Shown here piece by piece: positions 27,860 through 58,548 of a DNA stretch of 64,000 bases. The notes beneath the pieces were generated by a model. The model was not told the origin of the DNA. It made no database searches and was given only the letters and a program-made list of their open reading frames with translations. The DNA comes from Adineta vaga. Lineage: Eukaryota > Animalia > Rotifera. The stretch is taken from the NCBI GenBank assembly GCA_021613535.1, contig CP075497.1:12462001-12526000 (forward strand), in the 5' to 3' direction. Made by a program: the position numbers and the translations under genes. Positions within the stretch are counted from its first letter, which is position 1, and every line of letters starts with the position of its first letter.

Positions 27860-28842
27860 TTAATTATTATTTGTATTATTCGAATTTTGTTGTGTTGTTG
27901 TTGTTGTTGTTTGATCATTTGATTGTGATGAATCATTCGAAAGAACTTTTGGTTTAGGAATTTTTGATAAAATTTCTTTGATTTGTTTTCCTTCATGAGG
28001 TGAATCTGCATCATATGTTGTCATTAATTCATAATATTTAAGTAAATGTTTAACAACTTCATAAATTCTTTCAACATCAATTTGTGCATCAATCATATAT
28101 TGTTTTAAAAGTGCCATTTTATCACGATATGTTGCTGCAAGTAATAAACAAGCTAATGCAATTTCATAAGGAGGATAAAGAAGAGGTGCATCTGTTTTTA
28201 ATGAATCATTTATAATACGCCATGATGCTTCAAATAATTGTTGATCGATTTGAAATTCTCTTGTATACATATCTAATGAACGATATGGATGATAAACAAT
28301 TAAACAACAATCCATTATTTCAAGTAAATAAAATTCACATTCAAGAATATGTTTAATTTGATATGGATATTCATTTGGACCACCTAAACAAAAACATTGA
28401 AACTTTTATTCTTTTCAACGACAATAAAAACAATGAATTTTTTACCAAGAAGATGAACATATTTTTTATAAGTTGCAGCAGCTGCATTACAAACTCTTGG
28501 ATGATTTAATGTTGAGAATTCTTCAACTTTAGCTGCAAGAAATAAACAAGTTGGACAAAGTAACCATGGATCAATACTTTTCAATGGATATCGTGCATAA
28601 AATCGTTTTAAATAAACAATTCCTGTTGCAATGACTTGTTGACGAACTTTATATTGTTCACCAATATATTGAATAATATTTGAATAGAAAATTAAAATTT
28701 TTAAATAATCATCTTCAGTTATTGGTGAAGAATTATTGTTTATTGACCAAGAAGAAATATCTCGTAAACGAACAGATAATAATTCTTGACGATCAAATAA
28801 CCATTGATCAAATTGAGAACTTTTCCAATAAGATGAAGCCAT
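27860..28842 (-). CDS. CCNC: Cyclin C, copy 1 (2 exons)
   Basis: MASSYWKSSQFDQW, VRQQVIATGIVYLKRFYARYPLKSIDP, FLAAKVEEF, ECEFYLLEIMDCCLIVYHPYR. Intron at ~28385-28445. Confidence 0.96.
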
Positions 28843-28929
28843 GTGTTTTTTTTTTATCTAAAAAACAATAAATTATATTCACAATTATTTTGTATTTTAC
28901 AAAATATTCTTCGAAAAAGAAATGAAATT

Positions 28930-30247
28930 CTATTTAAATCCTTTATCAGCAAGTTCTTGACGAACACGATGTAAATATGTTGGATCAGGATAACCAAATC
29001 TAAAAGAAGAAAAAAATGAATTTCAGTAAAAAGAAAAGATATAAAAATACCGATCTGGTCCACCATAAAGATTTGTTTTATGATGAATATCATTCCATGT
29101 TATAACATTATCCATTCCTGTTGTCACAGATTTTCCAATTGTAAATATATGTTGATCATTAAATGCACGAATTAATAAATTTAAAATTTCTTTTCCTTCT
29201 TTTATATTTGGTAAATAAGCTTTTCGTACTGTTCCACTATAAGATGAACCGGGATTTGGATTTAATGAACTTTGAATTCCATGTTGAAATGAATATGTTA
29301 TTTCAATTGTTCCACCTTCATTCGGATCATATGAATATGATTCAAATCCTGGTAAAACGACTTGAATGAATCGTGTTGACATTTGACCATTTGATGGTTG
29401 AGGACCTGAAGAAATGAATAAAGAATATTTTAATAAAAGTATTTAAAAAAAACCTTTAGAAATTCCATAAACATATCCACAACTTGGACAAGATTGTTTT
29501 CCATTCGATTGAAACCATTGATCAATACAAGATTGATGAAAAGAATGACCACAGATTTCAAGTCGACGACAAGAAGAAGAATTTAACGGTTCAAGACATA
29601 TCATACAATCACCAAGTTCTTCATGTTGTTCTAAATCAATTCTTTTTATTAAAAGAAAAATTGAGAATATTTATTAAAACCTTCGTCATTCCATCGATGT
29701 TGATGATCAAATTGAGATATTTCATCATTATTACTAAATGTATTTGATGAAATTGTTATAGAATTATTTTTTAGTGATTTTTGTAATTCTTCAAATTTCT
29801 CTACCCATATTTGACATGTATAAAGAATATGTTGATCATTAACAGACATATCACGATAATTGATTTCATTTCCAAGATTTAATTGACGAAATTGACATAG
29901 AATACAACCTTGAGAAATACATTGAGAACAATGAAAATGATTTTTAGAACATGAAAATGGTTGTTCAATAACATTTAAATTATTACAACAAACTAAAATA
30001 GAAATGGAATATATTAATAAATATCTCGAACTCGAAGAATATCTTATTTACCTGAACATATTTTATAACTAAATATAAATTGTTCAGCAAATTTGTACCA
30101 ACAATTTGGACAAGTTGTTTGACAAATTGTATCGTTTAAAACACAATGATTACAAATAATATGTCCACAATTGAGTATTTTTCCACTGTTAATTATTGAT
30201 TGTGAACACCATTGACATATTCGATTGATTGAACGATTGGAATTCAT
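28930..30247 (-). CDS. Deltex-family E3 ubiquitin ligase (N-terminal RING-like + RING-H2 + DTC domain, no WWE), copy 1
   Basis: CMICLE...CGHSFHQSC...CPSC, GPQPSNGQM, AYLPN..EG, IFTIGKSVTTG, WNDIHHKT...GYPDPTYLHRVRQEL. Four exons. Confidence 0.92.
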
Positions 30248-40374: not shown

Positions 40375-41356
40375 TTAATTATTATTTGTATTATTCGAAT
40401 TTTGTTGTGTTGTTGTTGTTGTTTGATCATTTGATTGTAATGAATCATTCGAAAGAACTTTTGGTTTAGGAATTTTTGATAAAATTTCTTTGATTTGTTT
40501 TCCTTCATGAGGTGAATCTGCATCATATGTTGTCATTAATTCATAATATTTAAGTAAATGTTTAACAACTTCATAAATTCTTTCAACATCAATTTGTGCA
40601 TCAATCATGTATTGTTTTAAAAGTGCCATTTTATCACGATATGTTGCTGCAAGTAATAAACAAGCTAATGCAATTTCATAAGGAGGATAAAGAAGAGGTG
40701 CATCTGTTTTTAATGAATCATTTATAATACGCCATGATGCTTCAAATAATTGTTGATCGATTTGAAATTCTCTTGTATACATATCTAATGAACGATATGG
40801 ATGATAAACAATTAAACAACAATCCATTATTTCAAGTAAATAAAATTCACATTCAAGAATATGTTTTATCTGATATGGATATTCATTTGGACCACCTAAA
40901 CAAAATACATTGAAACTTTTATTTTTTTCAATAAGAATAAAAACAATGAATTTTTTTACCAAGAAGATGAACATATTTTTTGTAAGTTGCAGCAGCTGCA
41001 TTACAAACTCTTGGATGATTTAATGTTGAGAATTCTTCAACTTTAGCTGCAAGAAATAAACAAGTTGGACAAAGTAACCATGGATCAATACTTTTCAATG
41101 GATATCGTGCATAAAATCGTTTTAAATAAACAATTCCTGTTGCAATGACTTGTTGACGAACTTTATATTGTTCACCAATATATTGAATAATATTTGAATA
41201 GAAAATTAAAATTTTTAAATAATCATCTTCAGTTATTGGTGAAGAATTATTGTTTATTGACCAAGAAGAAATATCTCGTAAACGAACAGATAATAATTCT
41301 TGACGATCAAATAACCATTGATCAAATTGAGAACTTTTCCAATAAGATGAAGCCAT
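40375..41356 (-). CDS. CCNC: Cyclin C, copy 2
   Basis: Same exon structure as copy 1, frame intact after splicing. Visible differences are SLQ versus SSQ and one fewer Thr in the tail. Confidence 0.93.
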
Positions 41357-41440
41357 TTATTCTTTTATCTAAAAAACAATAAATTATATTCACAATTATT
41401 TTGTATTTTACAAAATATTCTTAGAAAAAGAAATGAAATT

Positions 41441-42759
41441 CTATTTAAATCCTTTATCAGCAAGTTCTTGACGAACACGATGTAAATATGTTGGATCAGG
41501 ATAACCAAATCTAAAAGAAGAAAAAAATGAATTTCAGTAAAAAGAAAAGATATAAAAATACCGATCTGGTCCACCATAAAGATTTGTTTTATGATGAATA
41601 TCATTCCATGTTATAACATTATCCATTCCTGTTGTCACAGATTTTCCAATTGTAAATATATGTTGATCATTAAATGCACGAATTAATAAATTTAAAATTT
41701 CTTTTCCTTCATTTATATTTGGTAAATAAGCTTTTCGTACTGTTCCACTATAAGATGAACCGGGATTTGGATTTAATGAACTTTGAATTCCATGTTGAAA
41801 TGAATATGTTATTTCAATTGTTCCACCTTCATTCGGATCATATGAATATGATTCAAATCCAGGTAAAACCACTTGAATGAATCGTGTTGACATTTGACCA
41901 TTTGATGGTTGAGGACCTGAAGGAATGAATAAAGAATATTTTAATAAAAGTATTTAAAAAAAAACCTTTAGAAATTCCATAAACATATCCACAACTTGGA
42001 CAAGATTGTTTTCCATTCGATTGAAACCATTGATCAATACAAGATTGATGAAAAGAATGACCACAGATTTCAAGTCGACGACAAGAAGAAGAATTTAACG
42101 GTTCAAGACATATCATACAATCACCAAGTTCTTCATGTTGTTCTAAATCAATTCTTTTTATTAAAAGAAAAATTGAGAATATTTATTAAAACCTTCGTCA
42201 TTCCATCGATGTTGATGATCAAATTGAGATATTTCATCATTATTACTAAATGTATTTGATGAAATTGTTATAGAATTATTTTTTAGTGATTTTTGTAATT
42301 CTTCAAATTTCTCTACCCATATTTGACATGTATAAAGAATATGTTGATCATTAACAGACATATCACGATAATTGATTTCATTTCCAAGATTTAATTGACG
42401 AAATTGACATAGAATACAACCTTGAGAAATACATTGAGAACAATGAAAATGATTTTTAGAACATGAAAATGGTTGTTCAATAACATTTAAATTATTACAA
42501 CAAACTAAAATAGAAATGGAATATATTAATAAATATCTCGAACTTGAAGAATATCTTATTTACCTGAACATATTTTATAACTAAATATAAATTGTTCAGC
42601 AAATTTGTACCAACAATTTGGACAAGTTGTTTGACAAATTGTATCGTTTAAAACACAATGATTACAAATAATATGTCCACAATTGAGTATTTTTCCACTG
42701 TTAATTATTGATTGTGAACACCATTGACATATTCGATTGATTGAACGATTGGAATTCAT
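41441..42759 (-). CDS. Deltex-family E3 ligase, copy 2
   Basis: Same structure as 28930-30247; NINEG versus NIKEG. Confidence 0.9.
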
Positions 42760-49614: not shown

Positions 49615-50451
49615 ATGAAAAGTGAAAATTCTCGTTTAAGTTTTCATTCAACTCAATCAGAAGAAACATATTTATCAAGAAAAACAAATTTTTGTGAACA
49701 AATTTTATTTTATGTTCCATTAATAATTTCTTTGATTCTTTTACTAAGTGGAATTCTTTTATTTATCTATATTGAACAAAAACATAATAGACATAATCAA
49801 GAAGAATTTCTATCTTTTCAAGATAATTCTTTCAAATCAATATTTAATGGTTCTATTTCATTTTTCAATTAATAAATAAAAATTCTTTTTCTTTTAGAAA
49901 CTTTTCTTCAACTTTCTTGTTCATTTGAAAAGAAAGAAACATTAAGTGAACTTGATTTTGTTTTAAATGAAAGTAATTGTGGTTCAAATCGTTCATCATT
50001 GATTTATTTCTCCTATACAAAACGAATTCATTTTAATCAAATGATTCATTTTGATAAACGAATGATTTATCCACCAAATTTTAATTTTAATTGGACATTT
50101 CTATCAGAAATCAATTCTATTTCATTTATTTCAATATTATTAGATCCACAATTTAATAATTGGGGTATTATTACAATTCTTCTTCATGAAATTCGCTATT
50201 TTTCATTAAATATTCGCAATGGATTAAGTATTTGTTTATATCATCCAGTAGAGAATTTAAAATTTACTTTACAACCAAAAATTCTCTTATTTTATAGAAC
50301 AAATCAATCTTATTTTATGATTTTAACAAAAACAACTTGTTATCATTCATCTCATTCATTTAGTTTATCCGAATATATTCAATTAATTCAATTAAAACTT
50401 ATTGCTACAACAAATTTTACGATTGAAAATTATTATTTCGATTTTCATTAA
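49615..50451 (+). CDS. Uncharacterised single-pass membrane protein (2 exons)
   Basis: N-terminal TM (ILFYVPLIISLILLLSGILLFIYI); an intron at ~49850-49897 joins the two ORFs. Confidence 0.65.
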
Positions 50452-50643: not shown

Positions 50644-50856
50644 AAGTTTGTTAAAACTTATAAATGATTAAATATGAAATCTTTTCGAAAGTTAATTGAT
50701 GAATTATTTGAATTGATAAAAAGAAAATCTGTTAGTTTTAATGATGTCAATTGAAAGATATTCGACTGGTTTATAGAAATCCAATAAAAGATTTGTTCTG
50801 CGAAAAACGTGCATTGCATTGCAAATCTGATCTGTCTGCTGATTTTCACTGATAAA

Positions 50857-51270
50857 ATGGAAGCAAAATTAGCTGAATTTCGTAAATCACATGTTCAGAA
50901 CAAACCTTTTATCAATTGGAATAAAATCACATCAATCTTTTCATTTTCAAATAAATTATCTCAAATTAAAATCGAGAAAGACGAAGAAAAGGAAGAAACA
51001 GGAACAACTTGGCAAATCATTTTCTTAAAATTTTGTATTTGGTTCATATTATTCTTGATATTTATTCGTATTGAATTTGGTGCCATTTATTTTATTCTTT
51101 CTCTTTTATATTTAATTTGGATAAATTTAAGTTCTCATCGTCGACGATCAAATGAATTAAGTGCTTATTCAGTTTTTAATCCTAATTTTGAAAAACTTCA
51201 AGGAACATTTTCTGCAGAAGATTATGACCGTCAATTAAGACGTGGTGGATCACCTTTAATTTCATCGTAA
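50857..51270 (+). CDS. SAYSD1: SAYSvFN domain-containing protein
   Basis: MEAKLAEFRK, IEFGAIYFILS, ELSAYSVFNPNFEKLQGTFSAE. Confidence 0.93.
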   Translation: MEAKLAEFRKSHVQNKPFINWNKITSIFSFSNKLSQIKIEKDEEKEETGTTWQIIFLKFCIWFILFLIFIRIEFGAIYFILSLLYLIWINLSSHRRRSNELSAYSVFNPNFEKLQGTFSAEDYDRQLRRGGSPLISS

Positions 51271-51294
51271 TTCTTCTTCGTCTTTTTTTTTCAG

Positions 51295-52247
51295 ATGATT
51301 TCTTCTTCAATAAAACGTTTTTGTAATTCATCAATAAAAAAATATCATTGGTCACCAATCATTGCTGATGAATATCTTGATTTACCTGATTTTCAATTAA
51401 TGATTGTTGCTCATATAAAAGATCGTCGTTTAACCAATGAAATTCTTGAATTAATCGATGAAATTTATCCATGGAATAATTCATTAAAACATATAAGAAG
51501 AATATCAAATTCAGATATTATTCTTTATCCTTCAACATTTTCTAAACCAATTGAAAAAGATTTATTTGATAAATATTTTGATATGGAAATAAAAGAAATA
51601 AATATTCCGAAAACACCTTGTTTATTTAAATGGCAATATGAGAAATGTATTCAACAAACTTGGACAAATTTAATCTTTCGACAAAATCCAATTCTTGAAC
51701 AATCAATTTTAAAGAAAAAATTAAATGAAAATGATGAAATTATTTTAAATTTACTTCAAGTTTGTTGAATAAAAGAATCTTTGAAAAGATATTTTGTTTG
51801 TCTTTTTAGAAAATTCAAGGTGATGATAAAGAAGTTCATTGTGCAATTATTGTTGATAATGACGGACAAATTCCATTAGTTGGAACACGAGATTATCGTC
51901 ATGAACATCCATTACAACATTCAACAATTGTTGCAATTGATTCTCTTTCGAAAAATTCATTTTATTTAAGAGAAAATCTTTTAGAAAAATTTCTTGAAAA
52001 ATCTCAACCGAAAAAATCTTATTTATTAAATGGTTGTTCGATTTATTTAACTTATGAACCTTGTATTATGTGTTCAATGGCTTTACTTCATTCAAGAATA
52101 TCAAATGTTTATTATTTATATCGAAATCAACAATATGGAGCTTTAGGATCAATTTATAAATTACATACTTCGAAAAAAACCAATCATCGATTTAATGTTT
52201 ATCAATTAGAAACGATTTCTAATGATGATGATGATGTAAATAATTGA
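51295..52247 (+). CDS. ADAT3: tRNA adenosine deaminase non-catalytic subunit (Tad3/ADAT3)
   Basis: Exons 51295-51759 and 51810-52247. HPLQHSTIVAID (catalytic Glu absent), EPCIMCSMALLHSRI, NHRFNVY. Confidence 0.92.
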
Positions 52248-52333
52248 AATAAAGATTTTGTTTTTGAAAAAAAAATTAGTAAATAAAAGAAAACAGACCG
52301 ATGTTCAAATGGATTTGTTTTAGATAAGAAACA

Positions 52334-54262
52334 ATGCGTTTATTAATAAATTGTATTCGTTATTCTCCAAATCTTTTTATCTCTCGTCAATTTCATTTAT
52401 CATTACGAAATGATAATTTATTAAAAAGTTTATATAATCATTTTCAATATGGAAGAAAAGCAAAACAATTAGCATTAGAACGTGGAATTGATTTAAATAA
52501 TTTAACTGCTGAACAACGAATTAAACTTCAATCAATTTTAAAATTAAAAAATACATTTCGTGTTGTTAATGTTGTTATGGGTTTAATGGGTGTTATTGCT
52601 TTAGTTGTTTGGTTAAAACGTCGTCAAAACAAGATTTCAATTGAAAGAGAAATTAATAAAGAATTTGAACCAATTTGGATGAATTTAAAATATTTTAAAC
52701 ATAAAGGTGCTTTAGTTAAATCTTATTTATTACCTGAACAAATTATTGGAAAATTAAATGAAATACAAAATTTTCAATTTAATTCAAATCAATGTATTTG
52801 TGCTTCATTTCCAAAATCAGGAACAACTTTAATACAAGAAATTGTTTATTTACTTCAAACGAATTTTGATTATCAATCAGCTAAACAAATTGATATTTCC
52901 GAAAGATTTGCTTTTATCGAATGGCCATCGGTTAATTTACAAAAATTACCTCAAAATCAAACTTTTTTCAAAACACATTTACCGCCAACATTCTTCAATC
53001 AATCATTTACAAAACCTAAAGTAATTTTTAAAATATTGTTTAGAAATATAAGAAAGAAAGAGAAAAGCGGATTCGAGGATCCACTTAGGAATGGACCAGT
53101 TTCAGTTAACCCTTCCAGAACCGTGACTCAACCAGCAACAGAAATCTAATGAGATATTATATTTAACATAAGCATAAAGTGTTTTTCAAGTCATTTTCGT
53201 CAAATCAATATATTCGAATGTCATATAAGATTACTTCTAACTTGATTCCGACATAGAATACTCAAAATATTTTATATATGAGCAAAAGGATACTGTCTAC
53301 TACACTTGTATTTGAGAACAGAACAGATGCTAGACAATCCCATGAGATTCATTATCTAAATAATCCTATTGGACTTATAATTCATATACAGAGATATTGC
53401 ACGAAGTTTTCTCTGTATCGTGACGAAAAGTACATCCTAAAAGGGTGAATTGGTGCATCTCTAGATCCGCTTCTCCCCTTCCCTTGCTAAATCTTATATA
53501 TTTGCAGGTTCTTTTTGAAAATATTCATTGAAAGATTTTGTTATATTTAGGTGGTTTATGTATATCGAAATCCGAAAGATGTAACTGTATCTTTATTTCA
53601 TTTTCTTCGTTCGATAAATATTGAACTGACATATTCGGGACCATGGAATCAATTTGTTCAATCTTTTCTTATTGATGAAGGTATTTCTCTTTTTTGCTTG
53701 ATAAAAATTTTAATTTTATTTTAGTTTATTATGGTCCTTGGTGGAAACATGTGAATGATTATCATGCAATGAATGATTCAATCTTTTGTATTTCTTATGA
53801 AGATTTAATAACAGTAAAGAATTTATTCTCCTATGAAATCAAATGAAAATATTTATTGTTGAAGGATTTTCGTGGAAGTGTTCGTCGATTAGCAAAATAT
53901 TTAGGAAAAGAAAAAGAATTAACAGAAGAACAATTAGATAAATTAGAGAAATGGTGTTCATTTGATTCAATGAGAAATAATCCGAAAGTTAATTATAATT
54001 GGTTTAGAGAATGGGGTTTTGTTAAAAAATCATTTGCATTTTTAAGAAAAGGTTTGATTCGATTGAATTATTATTTTTTTAAATGAAAGTTTCTTTAGGT
54101 CAAATTGGTGATTGGTTAAATCATTTTGATGCTCAACAATCGAAAGAATATGATCAAATGGTTTCTAGTCGTGTTTCTCCCTCTGTTCCTCCTTTTAATT
54201 ATGGAATTTCTCAGGAAAATCAACAGAAACTTTATGATTACGATTCTCAACAAAAGAAATAG
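52334..54262 (+). CDS. Cytosolic-type (SULT, SULT4A1-like) sulfotransferase with N-terminal presequence and TM extension, 5 exons
   Basis: SFPKSGTTLIQEIVYL, KTHLP, YRNPKDVTVS, YGPWWKHV, SYEDL, FLRKGQIGDWLNHF. Stop TAG at 54260-54262. Confidence 0.92.
53064..53475. mobile_element. MITE-like insertion in sulfotransferase intron 1
   Basis: Ends AAGCGGATTCGAG and CTAGATCCGCTT are imperfect inverted repeats bracketing ~410 bp inside a ~530-nt intron. Confidence 0.5.
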
Positions 54263-54293
54263 TTTTCTTTTGTTTGTTTGCTTTTTCTTTCAG

Positions 54294-57200
54294 ATGCAAA
54301 AAACCGAAATTCACTGGTCACCGAACGATCGAAATCAATTAGCTGAAATCGGAGCTGAGATCATAATTCATACATTTGATCGACCATTAAGTGGAGAAAG
54401 TGGAAAATGTGTTCTTGGAGGTACAAATAGAAAAACAACAAGTCTTAATTATCCATTACATGAAAAGAATTATTTTAAAGTTTGATTTATTTTCTTGTTC
54501 AAGATTATTTCATTCTGAAAATGAATATTTAGTGTTGTGCTTGGTGGCCATCACAAGAATTTCCGTATGTATTTGCAATTGGACAACCAAATGGAAGAAT
54601 TATTTTTGAAAAGTAATAAAAATGAATTTTTTGATTTTCTTTTCGATTATTTCGTTTTGTTTTAGTGTTAAAGATCGATCGGATCCATTGAGTCAAGGAA
54701 GAATAGGTTTGATTTCCTTGTTATTTGAAAAAAAAATGAATGAATTTTTTCACTTCTTATTTAAGTAATTGAATCGAAACAAAATCGAGCATGTGTCGCA
54801 TTAGAATGGAATTCTAAACATCCAAATTTAGTAAAAAAAATTCATTGAAAATCATTTAAAGAACTATTTGTCCTTCTTTTTCAAGCTTCTGTCAGGTTTT
54901 GATCGATTTCGTGGAGAAAATTGTTTAACAATCTGGGATATAAATCATAATGGTATGTCTTCACCAACCTTACAAAACGGAACAGGAGGAATTCCTTCAT
55001 CATCATCCGCAACAAATATTGAAGAATATAAACGATATGATGTGTTTATGTCAAATCAATTAGTTTGTAAACCAATATTTGACCAAGGTGCTCATGAACA
55101 ATGTCATTCATTATCTTGGTTTAAACCTAATGAAAAAATCTTTGCTGCTTGTACAACACAACATAATACCAGAACGATTAAAATTTATGATCAAAGAAGT
55201 AATTTGTTTATTCTTTCTTTTGCCTATGAATAGAATCGAATGATACAATTTCTTTTTACATTCAGTTTTGTTTTCGAGAAATGATTCGTTGTGAAAACCA
55301 TCAAATTGAATCTTTTGTTTAGTTGCTTCATCAAGTGTTTTATCATTTCCAACGAAAGGACCATTTAATTTATGTTGTGATTCAAGTGAACGATATTTAG
55401 CGTCGAGTAATGATGTAAGAAGATTTTTGAGATAGATTTCAAAGGAAATTTATTTCTTCGTTTTAGAGAACAGTTTATGTTTATGATAGTCGTTCACCTG
55501 AAAAAGCATTGATTGTTCGAGAAGAACATGAACCTATTGTGAAATTGTCATGGAGTCGAATTGGGTAAGAAGATTTTGTTTATTTAAAGAAAGAAAGAAA
55601 GAAAGAATAAACTTTTTTTTTTTTTATTAAGATCATCTCAACTTGGTTATTGTATTCGAGATTCACCAAAATTTCATGTTTTATCAGTATCAACAAATCC
55701 TAATCATGAAAATGATGTTTTTGTTCATCGAATTCTTCAATGTAAAATCAAAATTTGTTTTTTGATTTTTCTCTTCAATTTTCTCCTTTTTAGGTCCAAT
55801 TCAACGATATCGTATTGGTTTAGCTTCATTTGATTGGAATTATTTTGATGAACATCGTCTTGTTTTATTAAGTGGAAAAGAATATTTTGATTATGTTATT
55901 CCATCTCGATCAACAATTGTATTTTTATCAATAAGATATTCTCTCAAAAACATATCTATTTCTTTTTATTTAGAATTATTCTCCACGAAATGGACTTTTA
56001 TGGACAAATGGTCATGAAATGTATCCATCGATCATTCCTCAAGATCAAAATCAATTAACTTCGAAAGTTTTATTCACATATGATTTATCAAATATTCAAA
56101 ATGAAAGAAGAAATGTGCCACCAACACAATCGATATTGAATAATGAAGTATGAACAAAAACAAATCTTTCATAGAAAATTAGTGTTTTTTTAGTTAATTC
56201 AAATGGATTTAAGAACAATGACAAAAGAAACTCAATCAACAATCGAACAAATTCAAAGATGGATTAAAAGTAAAGATAATCTTTTTCAAATTATTTCTCA
56301 AATCATTTTATTCAATTTAGGTACGAATACAGCAAGAGATCCTTATCCATTTATTGGTGTTATTGAATCATTAAGAGGTTTAGAAAAAGAACAACTTTTT
56401 TTTTATTCTAAATTTTCCTAATGAATAATAGAAGCTCAACCATCATCAACAAGTACAATAGCACATCAATCTTGGTCATCACTTATTAATTCAATTCATA
56501 CAAAAACTGTTTATGAATCACCAGAAAGGTAAAGACATTTCTCTTTCCTAGTAGCGTATTCAGCTCAACAATACCGAGATCGATAAAAACTCTGACCTAT
56601 CGCAGAAAGTCTTGCCCATCTGTTTAAAAATCCTGTTTCTTTCCAATTCCAACTAAATAATTATGAACTTTATGAAATAGTTGATAATATATTGAAATAT
56701 TTTCTAAAATAGACAAATCGTTGGTCAATTATGTGGTTGGTCAAATATTGATACAAAATCTGGTGGATACAATCGAATGACATCATTATTAGAACAAGAA
56801 GAATATGAAAAAGTCGCAGCGATTTATGTCTTTCAAATGGATATTAATCGAGCTTTAGAAGTTCTTAATGAAGGACTTCAGAGAGGTGGAAGAGAAGATT
56901 TAGCCACATTAATTCTTGCTTTAATTAGTTCAGTTCGAGCAACATCTACAAATAATGATGATAAAACATTAATTAATGATTTTTCTTCAGTAAAAAAATC
57001 GTTTCATCGTCCATATGTACGATCAATGTTTGAATTTATTTTAACATCCGACGGAAACGATCTTCAATATGAATGTGTTCTAGTATGAAGAAGGTTTTTT
57101 GATTTCAATTTATATCATTTTTATTTTTAAAGGATGAACAATTAGATCTCAATGATAAAGTTGCATTTGCAGCGAGATATTTAAATGATCAACGTCTTTA

Positions 57201-58198
57201 TGAGAAATTAGAAAAATTAGCGGATGATAGTCGAGACAAAGGAGAATTACAAGGAATTCTTCTAACAGGTTGATTTTAAAGAAAAATTTACTTGTTTTTT
57301 TTCTAATAAATTTCTTTTCAAGGTTTAAGACAAACTGGATGTGAATTAATTCAAAAATATCTTGATCAAACGAGTGATATTCGTACAGCTGCCTTACTTG
57401 CTATTTATGTACCTGAAGATGTTCATCAAGAATGTCGATATGTTCAAGAATGGATTGAAGGTTTTCGACTTCTTCTTGATGAACTTCAAATGTGGAGTGA
57501 ACGCGCTGAATTCGACATCTATCGTAGTCATATTGCTGGTACAGCATTACATCGTCGACATATATTTGATCGTCAAACAAATTTCACTCATCATTTTTCA
57601 TGTATTTTTTGTCAAACTCCTCTTGATAATCATCCTGGAATATCTAATCAAACTCCAATGTCGGCTGGTTTATCATCAAATCCTAATTCAGCATCAATAC
57701 CGACAACACCAATCAGACCACAAACTCGAGGATCACAACAATCCATAACAAATCGTACATCTGGATCATCCTCATCTTCATATCCTCCAACACAAAATTC
57801 AGATTTAGTTCGAAATCAAATTTCCATTTTTTTCTTTCTTTCTAAAAACTTATTCTTATCATTTTAGTTAATGGTTTGCAATAAATGTCGTCAAGTTTTA
57901 CCACGTTGTTCAATATGTATGATGAGTTTAACAACATATATTGAAGATGCATCTTATGCTTATGAACCTTTACCAGGTGAATTTCCTTTTTTTGTTGAAT
58001 AATTTATATATATATTTTCTATTAAATTTCTTTTTAGATAAACATACATTAATGTCAAGTCAATGGTTTACATGGTGTCGTTTATGTCGTCATGGTGGAC
58101 ATGCTGAACATGTATCAAATTGGTTTGCAATGAATCAACAATGTCCAGTTGCGAAATGTTTCTGTCGATGTACATTGATCGATGGAATTGTTGATTAG
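54294..58198 (+). CDS. MIOS: GATOR2 complex protein Mios (WD40 + C-terminal zinc/RING), many exons
   Basis: MQKTEIHWSP start; GELQGILLTGL; LPRCSIC; C-terminal WFTWCRLCRHGGHAEHVSNWF..CPVAKCFCRC. Confidence 0.92.
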
Positions 58199-58548
58199 TA
58201 TTTTTTCTTTCAATAGAATAAAAAACAAAAAAAAATCACATTTTATTGAATAAAGCAATCGAACTGTCAATCAAATGAATATTTACATTATTTCTATATA
58301 CAAAAAAGAAAATTTCAACTTTTGTTAATTCATTAAGAAAAGATCGTTCTTCGAATATTTTCAATAACTTGACGAGGAAAAGTAAAAAGGAAAGTATTAA
58401 ATTATTCTAACATAAGATTTTTATTTAAAATAAAAAATAGAAATTCATAAAAGAAGAAAAGAACCGGATTATTTATTTAATAATCTCTTAGAAAGATGTT
58501 GAATAGGACGGAATACATCCTTAGATGTAAATAAAATCAAAACTAAAA

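What the first reader, a model, noticed from the sequence alone, without database searches (positions are those of the whole stretch)
50857..58198. Candidate four-gene operon (SAYSD1-ADAT3-SULT-MIOS) resolved by spliced-leader trans-splicing
Seen: four unrelated conserved housekeeping genes on one strand with stop-to-ATG gaps of only 24 nt (51271-51294), 86 nt (52248-52333) and 31 nt (54263-54293). The two shortest gaps are almost pure polypyrimidine tract ending in TTTCAG directly abutting the ATG. The 86-nt gap has AATAAA just after the stop and TTTTAG 10 nt before the ATG. These acceptors have no plausible local cis donor, and the gaps leave no room for a promoter. Known: bdelloid rotifers have SL trans-splicing, and nematodes and tunicates use it to resolve operons. 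Inference: this is a polycistronic unit. The 24- and 31-nt gaps lack a poly(A) signal and resemble C. elegans SL1-type operons, where upstream 3'-end formation and downstream trans-splicing compete. I am not aware of rotifer operons being well characterised.
Basis: partly seen in the sequence, partly recalled or inferred. Interest (0 to 1): 0.9.

Follow-up and report, generated by a model that had tools for sequence, protein, structure and literature searches.

The report
Conserved four-gene operon candidate, bdelloid rotifer
Four unrelated housekeeping genes lie head to tail with gaps of 24, 86 and 31 bases, each ending in a splice acceptor, and at least 12 bdelloid rotifer lineages keep this layout, which makes it a strong but RNA-unproven candidate for the first documented rotifer operon.

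Summary
SAYSD1, an ADAT3-like deaminase, a sulfotransferase and MIOS lie on the + strand with stop-to-ATG gaps of 24, 86 and 31 nt. Each gap ends in a 3' splice acceptor 0 or 10 nt before the ATG.

The genome (100.8 Mb, 6 contigs, Adineta vaga-like) carries 42 copies of the published bdelloid spliced-leader exon, each followed by a GT donor.

The main new evidence is comparative. The same four-gene order occurs in A. ricciae, Rotaria and about ten further environmental bdelloid lineages. Gaps range from 0 to 93 nt. In two lineages the ADAT3 stop codon TAG is itself the acceptor AG, and the next ATG abuts it. All 32 downstream-gene junctions keep a YAG no more than 11 nt before the ATG. The first gene has none abutting in any of 12 lineages. 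The flanking genes differ between lineages.

Co-transcription and SL addition are therefore inferred, at about 0.7.

Held literature lists rotifer operons as not determined or not reported. The scan noted a second operon-like cluster in this window (s1-482783).

The parts
50739..50806 (+). Conserved non-coding block about 50-120 nt upstream of the SAYSD1 ATG. It holds a CCAAT-like box and is followed by a recurrent GCTGATC motif. It is the candidate shared promoter and 5' region of the unit.
   Evidence: Alignment A2 of 9 lineages. tblastx hits outside coding sequence to A. ricciae, Rotaria and L023. GCTGATC motif listed. The function is inferred, not tested.
50857..51270 (+). Gene 1, SAYSD1-like, single exon, 137 aa. 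No polypyrimidine+YAG acceptor near its ATG.
   Evidence: Pfam SAYSvFN 6.5e-28. Orthologues. Upstream context.
51271..51294 (+). Junction 1, 24 nt. It is a polypyrimidine tract plus CAG, with the AG at 51293-51294, abutting ATG 51295. No AATAAA or ATTAAA lies in it.
   Evidence: Conserved as YAG|ATG in 12 of 12 lineages with gaps of 7-85 nt.
51295..52247 (+). Gene 2, ADAT3-like tRNA deaminase subunit. Exons 51295-51759 and 51810-52247, with a 50-nt intron. The catalytic HAE motif is replaced by HPL, and the PCxxC zinc motif is kept.
   Evidence: Pfam dCMP_cyt_deam_1 and MafB19-deam. Alignment A1 invariant columns. ADAT3-named relative P0125.
52248..52333 (+). Junction 2, 86 nt. AATAAA at 52248-52253 lies directly after the stop. 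A second AATAAA is at 52282-52287. The acceptor TTTTAG ends at 52323. A 10-nt leader follows, then ATG 52334.
   Evidence: TTTTAG|ATAA is conserved across lineages, with gaps of 0-93 nt.
52334..54262 (+). Gene 3, sulfotransferase with an N-terminal hydrophobic segment. Five exons: 52334-53020, 53551-53680, 53725-53813, 53865-54051, 54099-54262 (418 aa by my exon reading).
   Evidence: Pfam Sulfotransfer_1 on three exons. tblastn of the A. ricciae orthologue P0135. Splice sites read.
54263..54293 (+). Junction 3, 31 nt. It is a polypyrimidine tract plus CAG, with the AG at 54292-54293, abutting ATG 54294.
   Evidence: YAG|ATG in 9 of 9 lineages, with gaps of 21-81 nt.
54294..58198 (+). Gene 4, MIOS (GATOR2 subunit), multi-exon. 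The first exon is 54294-54420 and the stop is TAG 58196-58198.
   Evidence: Pfam MIOS_a-sol 2e-11. Orthologue models carry MIOS_WD40, MIOS_a-sol and zinc_ribbon_16. Exon 1 peptide is 88-100% identical across lineages.
58199..58260 (+). Likely 3' end region of the unit. AATAAA at 58217-58222 and 58249-58254. The next gene is convergent on the minus strand.
   Evidence: Minus-strand neighbour conserved in A. ricciae.

Best explanation
The four genes form one transcription unit, an operon of the metazoan spliced-leader type.

Transcription starts upstream of SAYSD1, and the conserved block at 50739-50806 is the candidate promoter. It runs through all four genes.

The three downstream mRNAs get their 5' ends by trans-splicing of the 22-23-nt bdelloid spliced leader onto the acceptors. 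These acceptors end at 51294, 52323 and 54293. The SL then supplies the whole, or nearly the whole, 5' UTR, and a purine at -3 of the ATG.

The upstream mRNAs are ended by cleavage and polyadenylation at or close to these acceptors. At junction 2 a canonical AATAAA sits right after the stop, leaving roughly a 50-nt intercistronic piece. At junctions 1 and 3 there is no room for this, so 3'-end formation and trans-splicing must act on nearly the same nucleotides. That resembles C. elegans SL1-type operons or Ciona operons.

Shown here: the anatomy, the SL RNA genes and the conservation. Inferred: co-transcription, SL use at these sites and the position of the 3' ends.
For: 1. Anatomy is as described and gene identities hold.

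2. The genome has 42 copies of (T)GCTTATTACAACTTACCAAGAG followed by a GTAAAT donor. They have conserved upstream boxes and compensatory changes in the intron stem. This matches the published rotifer SL (PMC3795323 Table 1). [quoted passage not shown]

3. The same order and strand are found in these sources:
- A. ricciae (L012)
- Rotaria sp. Silwood1 (L013-15)
- Logan contigs L018-20, L021-22 and L105
- ENA contigs L107 and L108
- JGI moss-metagenome contigs L023-L029

4. Gap ranges across lineages are 7-85 nt at junction 1, 0-93 nt at junction 2 and 21-81 nt at junction 3. In L018 and L021 the ADAT3 stop TAG is the acceptor AG and the sulfotransferase ATG follows with 0 nt between. In L108 junction 1 is 7 nt.

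5. A YAG lies no more than 11 nt before the ATG at 32 of 32 downstream junctions, and abuts it at 25. This includes genomes of 41-49% GC, where a T-rich tract is not background. The first gene has no abutting PPT+YAG in any of 12 lineages.

6. Flanks are not conserved in the same way. The upstream neighbour is tandem in Adineta, inverted in Rotaria, L023 and L025, and a different gene in L018 and L021.

7. The only conserved non-coding block lies upstream of gene 1.

8. Public gene models fuse SAYSD1 with ADAT3 in A. vaga (P0121) and A. steineri (P0099), a typical annotation symptom of operons.
Against: There is no RNA-level evidence. No RNA-derived contig of any bdelloid could be reached.

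A crude scan of 264 kb did not show PPT+YAG|ATG to be enriched over control trinucleotides. The motif by itself is therefore not diagnostic, and I cannot say operons are common in this genome.

The early-branching bdelloid Didymodactylos carnosus has SAYSD1, a 572-nt gap, then the sulfotransferase. Its ADAT3 lies elsewhere and no MIOS is nearby. The unit is thus not universal in bdelloids.

Promoters inside upstream coding sequence cannot be excluded from DNA alone.
Confidence: 0.7

Rival explanations
1. Four separate transcription units packed tightly. Each downstream gene has its own promoter embedded in the coding region of the gene before it. A short outron is transcribed and removed by SL trans-splicing. 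The acceptors are real SL acceptors, but there is no polycistronic precursor.
For: SL trans-splicing in bdelloids is reported for most mRNAs, not only for clustered genes. A non-clustered junction, D. carnosus with its 572-nt gap, also ends in TTTCAG|ATG. Internal promoters are known in C. elegans 'hybrid' operons (my own knowledge).
Against: Gaps of 0-27 nt are kept for the whole divergence of Adineta, Rotaria and other lineages while the flanks rearrange. This is what selection on a shared transcript predicts. Independent promoters would tolerate separation. No conserved non-coding promoter-like block exists except upstream of gene 1.
Confidence: 0.2
2. The acceptors are used in cis. Either a 5' UTR exon upstream of SAYSD1 is spliced alternatively onto 51295, 52324 or 54294, which is a shared promoter with alternative splicing and no SL. 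Or fusion proteins are made, as in the public SAYSD1-ADAT3 models.
For: Public annotations contain fused models. P0121 joins SAYSD1 residues 1-105 to ADAT3 exon 2. P0099 joins near the SAYSD1 C-terminus to ADAT3.
Against: The fused models delete conserved parts of both proteins. Every lineage keeps the upstream stop codon and a full-length downstream ORF whose conservation begins exactly at the ATG after the acceptor. No conserved GT donor is seen in the SAYSD1 5' region. P0121 is on record on only one contig, the genome.
Confidence: 0.06
3. Chance tight spacing in a compact AT-rich genome. The T-rich tracts and AGs are compositional, and the downstream genes are expressed by some other route such as reinitiation or very short leaders.
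For: The genome is about 27-30% GC, so T-runs are common. The control-trinucleotide scan shows no enrichment of YAG|ATG.
Against: The YAG is kept at 32 of 32 junctions in lineages whose spacers differ in length and sequence, including genomes of 41-49% GC. It is absent before the first gene.
Confidence: 0.03

Closest known systems
C. elegans SL1-type operons and Ciona or Oikopleura operons, which have no intercistronic region
   Same: The downstream gene's trans-splice acceptor lies within a few nucleotides of the end of the upstream gene. Examples here are junctions 1 and 3, and the 0-nt junction 2 in L018 and L021. There is no room for a separate promoter. The genes are functionally unrelated housekeeping genes.
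   Different: The phylum and the SL RNA are different. Neither the poly(A) sites nor SL use has been mapped here. In two lineages the upstream stop codon itself supplies the acceptor AG. I cannot say from the held literature whether that arrangement has been described elsewhere.
C. elegans SL2-type operons
   Same: Junction 2 has AATAAA right after the stop and an acceptor 42-93 nt further on in most lineages. That is an intercistronic spacer of the same order as the roughly 100 nt in C. elegans.
   Different: No operon-specific second SL has been shown in rotifers. Published work reports one SL. Scan notes s1-482597 and s1-482613 propose a second class, which I did not test. No Ur-like element was identified.
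Chaetognath operons (Paraspadella gotoi; PMC12460157)
   Same: Chaetognaths are a gnathiferan relative with SL trans-splicing and operons. Operons there are defined as same-strand genes less than 250 bp apart with SL evidence. The genes are enriched for housekeeping functions and there is no operon-specific SL.
   Different: In chaetognaths the SL and operon calls rest on RNA-seq and Iso-Seq. Here only DNA-level and comparative evidence exists.

Membership tests
Metazoan operon resolved by SL trans-splicing | Two or more same-strand genes with very short intercistronic distances | tested here: met
   Gaps of 24, 86 and 31 nt, and 0-93 nt in other lineages.
Metazoan operon resolved by SL trans-splicing | The organism has SL RNA genes and SL trans-splicing | tested here: met
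   42 SL exon copies with a GT donor in G000. The literature supports SL use in bdelloids.
Metazoan operon resolved by SL trans-splicing | A 3' splice acceptor upstream of each downstream gene, with no cis donor | tested here: inconclusive
   Acceptors are present and conserved at 32 of 32 junctions. Absence of a cis donor is only suggested. Predicted fused models exist.
Metazoan operon resolved by SL trans-splicing | SL sequence found on the downstream mRNAs at those acceptors | not testable with these tools
No RNA-derived contigs were reachable.
Metazoan operon resolved by SL trans-splicing | A single promoter and a polycistronic precursor | not testable with these tools
   Only indirect evidence: the one conserved non-coding block lies upstream of gene 1, and gene 1 lacks an acceptor.
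Metazoan operon resolved by SL trans-splicing | Gene order and strand conserved beyond the surrounding synteny | tested here: met
   The unit is intact in at least 12 lineages. The upstream neighbour is inverted or replaced. It is not intact in D. carnosus.
SL2-type (specialised SL) operon | A distinct SL used for downstream genes | not tested
   Only one SL exon sequence was searched. The second-class SL notes s1-482597 and s1-482613 were not checked.
ADAT3/Tad3 (non-catalytic subunit of the tRNA A34 deaminase) | CDA-fold deaminase domain with the zinc motif PCxxC kept and the catalytic Glu of HAE lost | tested here: met
   Pfam PF00383. H-P-L and E-P-C-x-M-C are invariant in A1. The ADAT3-named relative P0125 has E 1.5e-22. 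That loss of Glu defines ADAT3 is my own knowledge.
MIOS (GATOR2) | WD40 propeller, alpha-solenoid and C-terminal zinc ribbon | tested here: met
   PF21719 on a window exon. PF21720, PF21719 and PF17034 on orthologue models of the same locus.
SAYSD1 | SAYSvFN domain | tested here: met
   PF10260, 6.5e-28, full-length profile match.

The most novel reading that the evidence does not exclude
Bdelloid rotifers have genuine SL-resolved operons. This one is ancient: it is shared by Adineta, Rotaria and more divergent lineages, and it is kept as a unit while its neighbours rearrange. Compaction goes as far as an upstream stop codon doubling as the trans-splice acceptor of the next gene. It would be the first documented operon in Rotifera, and a concrete locus for studying how 3'-end formation and trans-splicing share a few nucleotides.
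Probability: 0.65. Interest if true: 0.75.

Novelty: new member of a known kind. Interest (0 to 1): 0.66.

Why it matters
SL trans-splicing has been known in bdelloids since 2005. Operons have not followed: a 2008 comparative table lists them as 'ND' for Rotifera (PMC2481426). [quoted passage not shown] My searches of the held library found no later report.

A deeply conserved, sharply defined four-gene unit has three uses:
- It is a ready test locus for whether rotifers use operons.
- It bears on the debate over whether operons follow wherever SL trans-splicing exists.
- It explains a class of annotation errors in published bdelloid genomes, namely fused or N-terminally truncated gene models.

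Tried and rejected
1. **Read laying.** No read evidence was obtained. I sent those letters to no database search tool afterwards. Local offline scripts did read window stretches that contain them, only against loci already fetched. They were masked.

2. **The look-up of encoding contigs with the window's SAYSD1.** Nothing is on record, and records of this genome appear to be withheld.

3. **Hunt for RNA-derived contigs.** I looked for full-length products of intron-containing genes from Logan. Only exon-sized ORFs turned up, meaning DNA. L018, L021 and L105 have an intronless ADAT3 but keep the sulfotransferase introns, so they are DNA too.

4. **P0123.** It looked like an ADAT3-sulfotransferase read-through ORF. 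It is an artefact of a gene caller reading TGA as sense, and the real gap is 65 nt. The same artefact lengthened the SAYSD1 call in L105, where the true gap is 63 nt, not 18.

5. **Ohnologue test.** All four genes are single copy in G000, so there is no second copy of the cluster to compare.

6. **Genome-wide prevalence.** Only 200 kb could be fetched. The crude ORF-based scan gave no enrichment, so I make no claim on how common such units are.

7. **Spliced proteins.** These were never joined.

8. **The 2005 SL paper** is not held.
Full report
**Observation**

- SAYSD1 runs 50857-51270 and ends in TAA. Then come 24 nt, ttcttcttcgtctttttttttcag, abutting the ATG at 51295.
- The second gene has exons 51295-51759 and 51810-52247. 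It ends in TGA, followed at once by AATAAA (52248-52253). A TTTTAG ends at 52323, and the third ATG follows 10 nt later at 52334.
- The third gene ends in TAG at 54260-54262. Then come 31 nt of T-rich sequence ending in cag, abutting the ATG at 54294.
- The fourth gene ends at 58198. It is followed by two AATAAA motifs and a convergent minus-strand gene.

Pfam confirms SAYSvFN, a CDA-type deaminase, Sulfotransfer_1 and MIOS_a-sol. The deaminase is ADAT3-like. The catalytic HAE motif reads HPL, and the PCxxC zinc motif is invariant in an alignment of nine orthologues. An arthropod relative is named ADAT3.

**Organism and spliced leader**

The window is C6:12462001-12526000 of a 100.8-Mb, six-contig assembly. 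A public A. vaga protein model is identical to parts of genes 1 and 2.

The published rotifer SL is GGCTTATTACAACTTACCAAGAG (PMC3795323 Table 1). It occurs 42 times as TGCTTATTACAACTTACCAAGAG, against 0 for the reversed control. Each copy is followed by GTAAAT. Each also has an intron of about 80 nt with compensatory stem changes between copies, and a conserved upstream box. The machinery the interpretation needs is therefore present.

**RNA evidence: none obtained**

The look-up of sequencing runs listed probable RNA holders. The cap then blocked a retry. I worked beside those places and sent them to no database search. Three local scripts read window stretches that include them, offline. They were masked.

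Exact-protein look-ups for this genome are withheld. No RNA-derived contig of another bdelloid was found. Searches were exon by exon by reference, or used intronless orthologue ORFs.

**Comparative evidence**

Orthologues of SAYSD1, ADAT3 and the sulfotransferase led to genomic contigs from many bdelloids. The order SAYSD1, ADAT3, sulfotransferase, MIOS on one strand is found in:
- A. ricciae (L012)
- Rotaria sp. Silwood1 (L013-15)
- three unnamed Logan lineages (L018-20, L021-22, L105)
- two ENA lineages of 49% and 41% GC (L107, L108)
- partial contigs from moss metagenomes (L023-L029)

Junctions under the standard code:

| Junction | Gaps (nt) | Acceptor |
|---|---|---|
| 1 | 24, 21, 13, 16, 12, 27, 14, 19, 18, 63, 85, 7 | YAG abutting the ATG in 12 of 12 |
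| 2 | 86, 78, 71, 0, 0, 93, 64, 42, 39, 78, 14 | YAG 0-11 nt before the ATG in 11 of 11 |
| 3 | 31, 37, 81, 21, 24, 71, 53, 71, 22 | YAG abutting in 9 of 9 |

In L018 and L021 the ADAT3 reading frame ends ...TTT TAG. That TAG is the acceptor AG, and the sulfotransferase ATG follows with no nucleotide between. In L108 junction 1 is seven nucleotides, and the polypyrimidine tract lies inside the SAYSD1 coding sequence.

The public Rotaria model of ADAT3 starts at an internal ATG. The true ATG abuts a CAG 13 nt after the SAYSD1 stop.

By contrast, the first gene has no polypyrimidine+YAG abutting its ATG in any of 12 lineages. Two have a weak YAG at -7.

Conservation of each downstream protein begins exactly at the ATG behind the acceptor. 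This argues against hidden upstream coding exons.

**Boundaries of the unit**

The gene upstream of SAYSD1 (window 49615-50451) is tandem in the two Adineta species. It is inverted, head to head, in Rotaria, L023 and L025. It is replaced by other genes in L018 and L021.

Downstream of MIOS the neighbour is convergent in the two Adineta species and in L021. The four genes therefore stay together while their surroundings change.

The only conserved non-coding block is at 50739-50806. It has a CCAAT-like box and is followed by a recurrent GCTGATC 15-30 nt before the ATG. I take it as the candidate promoter, by inference only.

**Limits**

Didymodactylos carnosus has SAYSD1, then 572 nt ending in TTTCAG|ATG, then the sulfotransferase. 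ADAT3 sits in another context and no MIOS is nearby. Two things follow. The unit was either assembled after that split or was broken there. And an acceptor abutting the ATG also occurs at a non-tight junction.

Within-genome statistics are weak. The excess over Markov shuffles largely reflects the lack of ORFs in shuffles. Control trinucleotides in 264 kb of real sequence show no excess of YAG|ATG. The argument therefore rests on conservation, not on motif counts. I make no claim about how common operons are in this genome.

**Mechanism**

Most likely (about 0.7), this is one promoter and one precursor. SL trans-splicing at 51294/51295, 52323/52324 and 54293/54294 creates the downstream 5' ends.

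After splicing, the SL end ...AAGAG would sit directly before the ATG at junctions 1 and 3. That gives a purine at -3, where the genomic context has C (inference).

Upstream 3' ends differ by junction:
- Junction 2 has AATAAA overlapping or right after the stop in 7 of 11 lineages. This predicts cleavage about 15-25 nt later and a short spacer.
- Junctions 1 and 3 have no canonical signal in the gap. L105 is an exception, with AATAAA 17 nt before the AG. L029 is another, with one 24 nt before the AG.
- In seven lineages an AATAAA or ATTAAA lies 38-48 nt inside ADAT3. SAYSD1 mRNAs may therefore end at the acceptor or just inside ADAT3.

Rivals:
- Embedded independent promoters, about 0.2.
- Cis use of the acceptors or fusion proteins, about 0.06. 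The fused public models P0121 and P0099 delete conserved parts.
- Chance, about 0.03.

**Comparison and novelty**

The anatomy matches SL-resolved operons of nematodes, tunicates and chaetognaths. Membership features that DNA can test are met. The two RNA-level features could not be tested.

In the held literature rotifer operons are 'ND' (PMC2481426) or 'not reported' (PMC7986045). No later report was found.

I class it as a new member of a known kind, in a phylum where the kind has not been documented. The scan's first readers noted a second operon-like cluster in this window (s1-482783). One of its junctions has the same TTTTTTAG|ATAAAA...ATG form.

Noticed in passing
window 53056-53481 (sulfotransferase intron 1): A GC-richer insert of about 425 bp, bounded by 17-nt imperfect inverted repeats (GAAAGAGAAAAGCGGAT / ATCCGCTTCTCCCCTTC). 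It makes this intron about 530 nt, against about 45 nt for the corresponding intron in A. ricciae. Only one weak partial match exists elsewhere in the genome (C2:392227-392301, 79%).
   Followed up: partly
window 28117-28960 and 40629-41470, minus strand: Two near-identical stretches, a segmental duplication. Each carries an operon-like junction: stop TAG, about 85 nt, then TTTTTTAG|ATAAAA...ATG. This is the same form as junction 2 here. It overlaps the scan's other candidate operon, s1-482783.
   Followed up: partly
P0121 (A. vaga), P0099 (A. steineri), Rotaria Silwood1 model in L013-L015:10551: Public gene models are wrong at this locus. SAYSD1 and ADAT3 are fused in two Adineta annotations. 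The Rotaria ADAT3 model starts 37 codons too late, missing the ATG that abuts the acceptor.
   Followed up: yes
L018:853-1743, L021:1749-2639, L105:6619-7527: ADAT3 has no intron in these three lineages. A. vaga, A. ricciae, Rotaria and L023-L026 have one of about 45-70 nt at the same position. This looks like lineage-specific intron loss.
   Followed up: partly
L104:585-1280, L105:6100-6600: Gene calls on some Logan contigs read TGA as a sense codon. This produces a false ADAT3-sulfotransferase read-through protein (P0123) and an over-long SAYSD1. L104 also has a TGA where the other lineages have Arg in the sulfotransferase, so it is possibly a decaying copy.
   Followed up: partly
G000 C1, C2, C4, C5, C6 (for example L001:1502-1680): SL RNA genes occur mostly as head-to-head pairs about 154 nt apart and in local arrays, notably C5 9.88-9.93 Mb and 10.91-10.93 Mb. 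A conserved GTGTA[GA]AGACA box lies about 50 nt upstream of the SL exon.
   Followed up: partly
window 50815-50850 and orthologous positions: A GCTGATC motif recurs 15-30 nt upstream of the SAYSD1 ATG in A. vaga, Rotaria, L023, L024, L025 and L107, with a variant (ATGATC) in L026. It is possibly an initiator or 5' UTR element.
   Followed up: no
L016:10001-13141 and L106:10001-12060 (Didymodactylos carnosus): In this early-branching bdelloid SAYSD1 and the sulfotransferase are adjacent but 572 nt apart. ADAT3 lies elsewhere, followed 174 nt later by a short-chain dehydrogenase on the same strand. Vps54 lies upstream of SAYSD1 there, and also in L108.
   Followed up: partly
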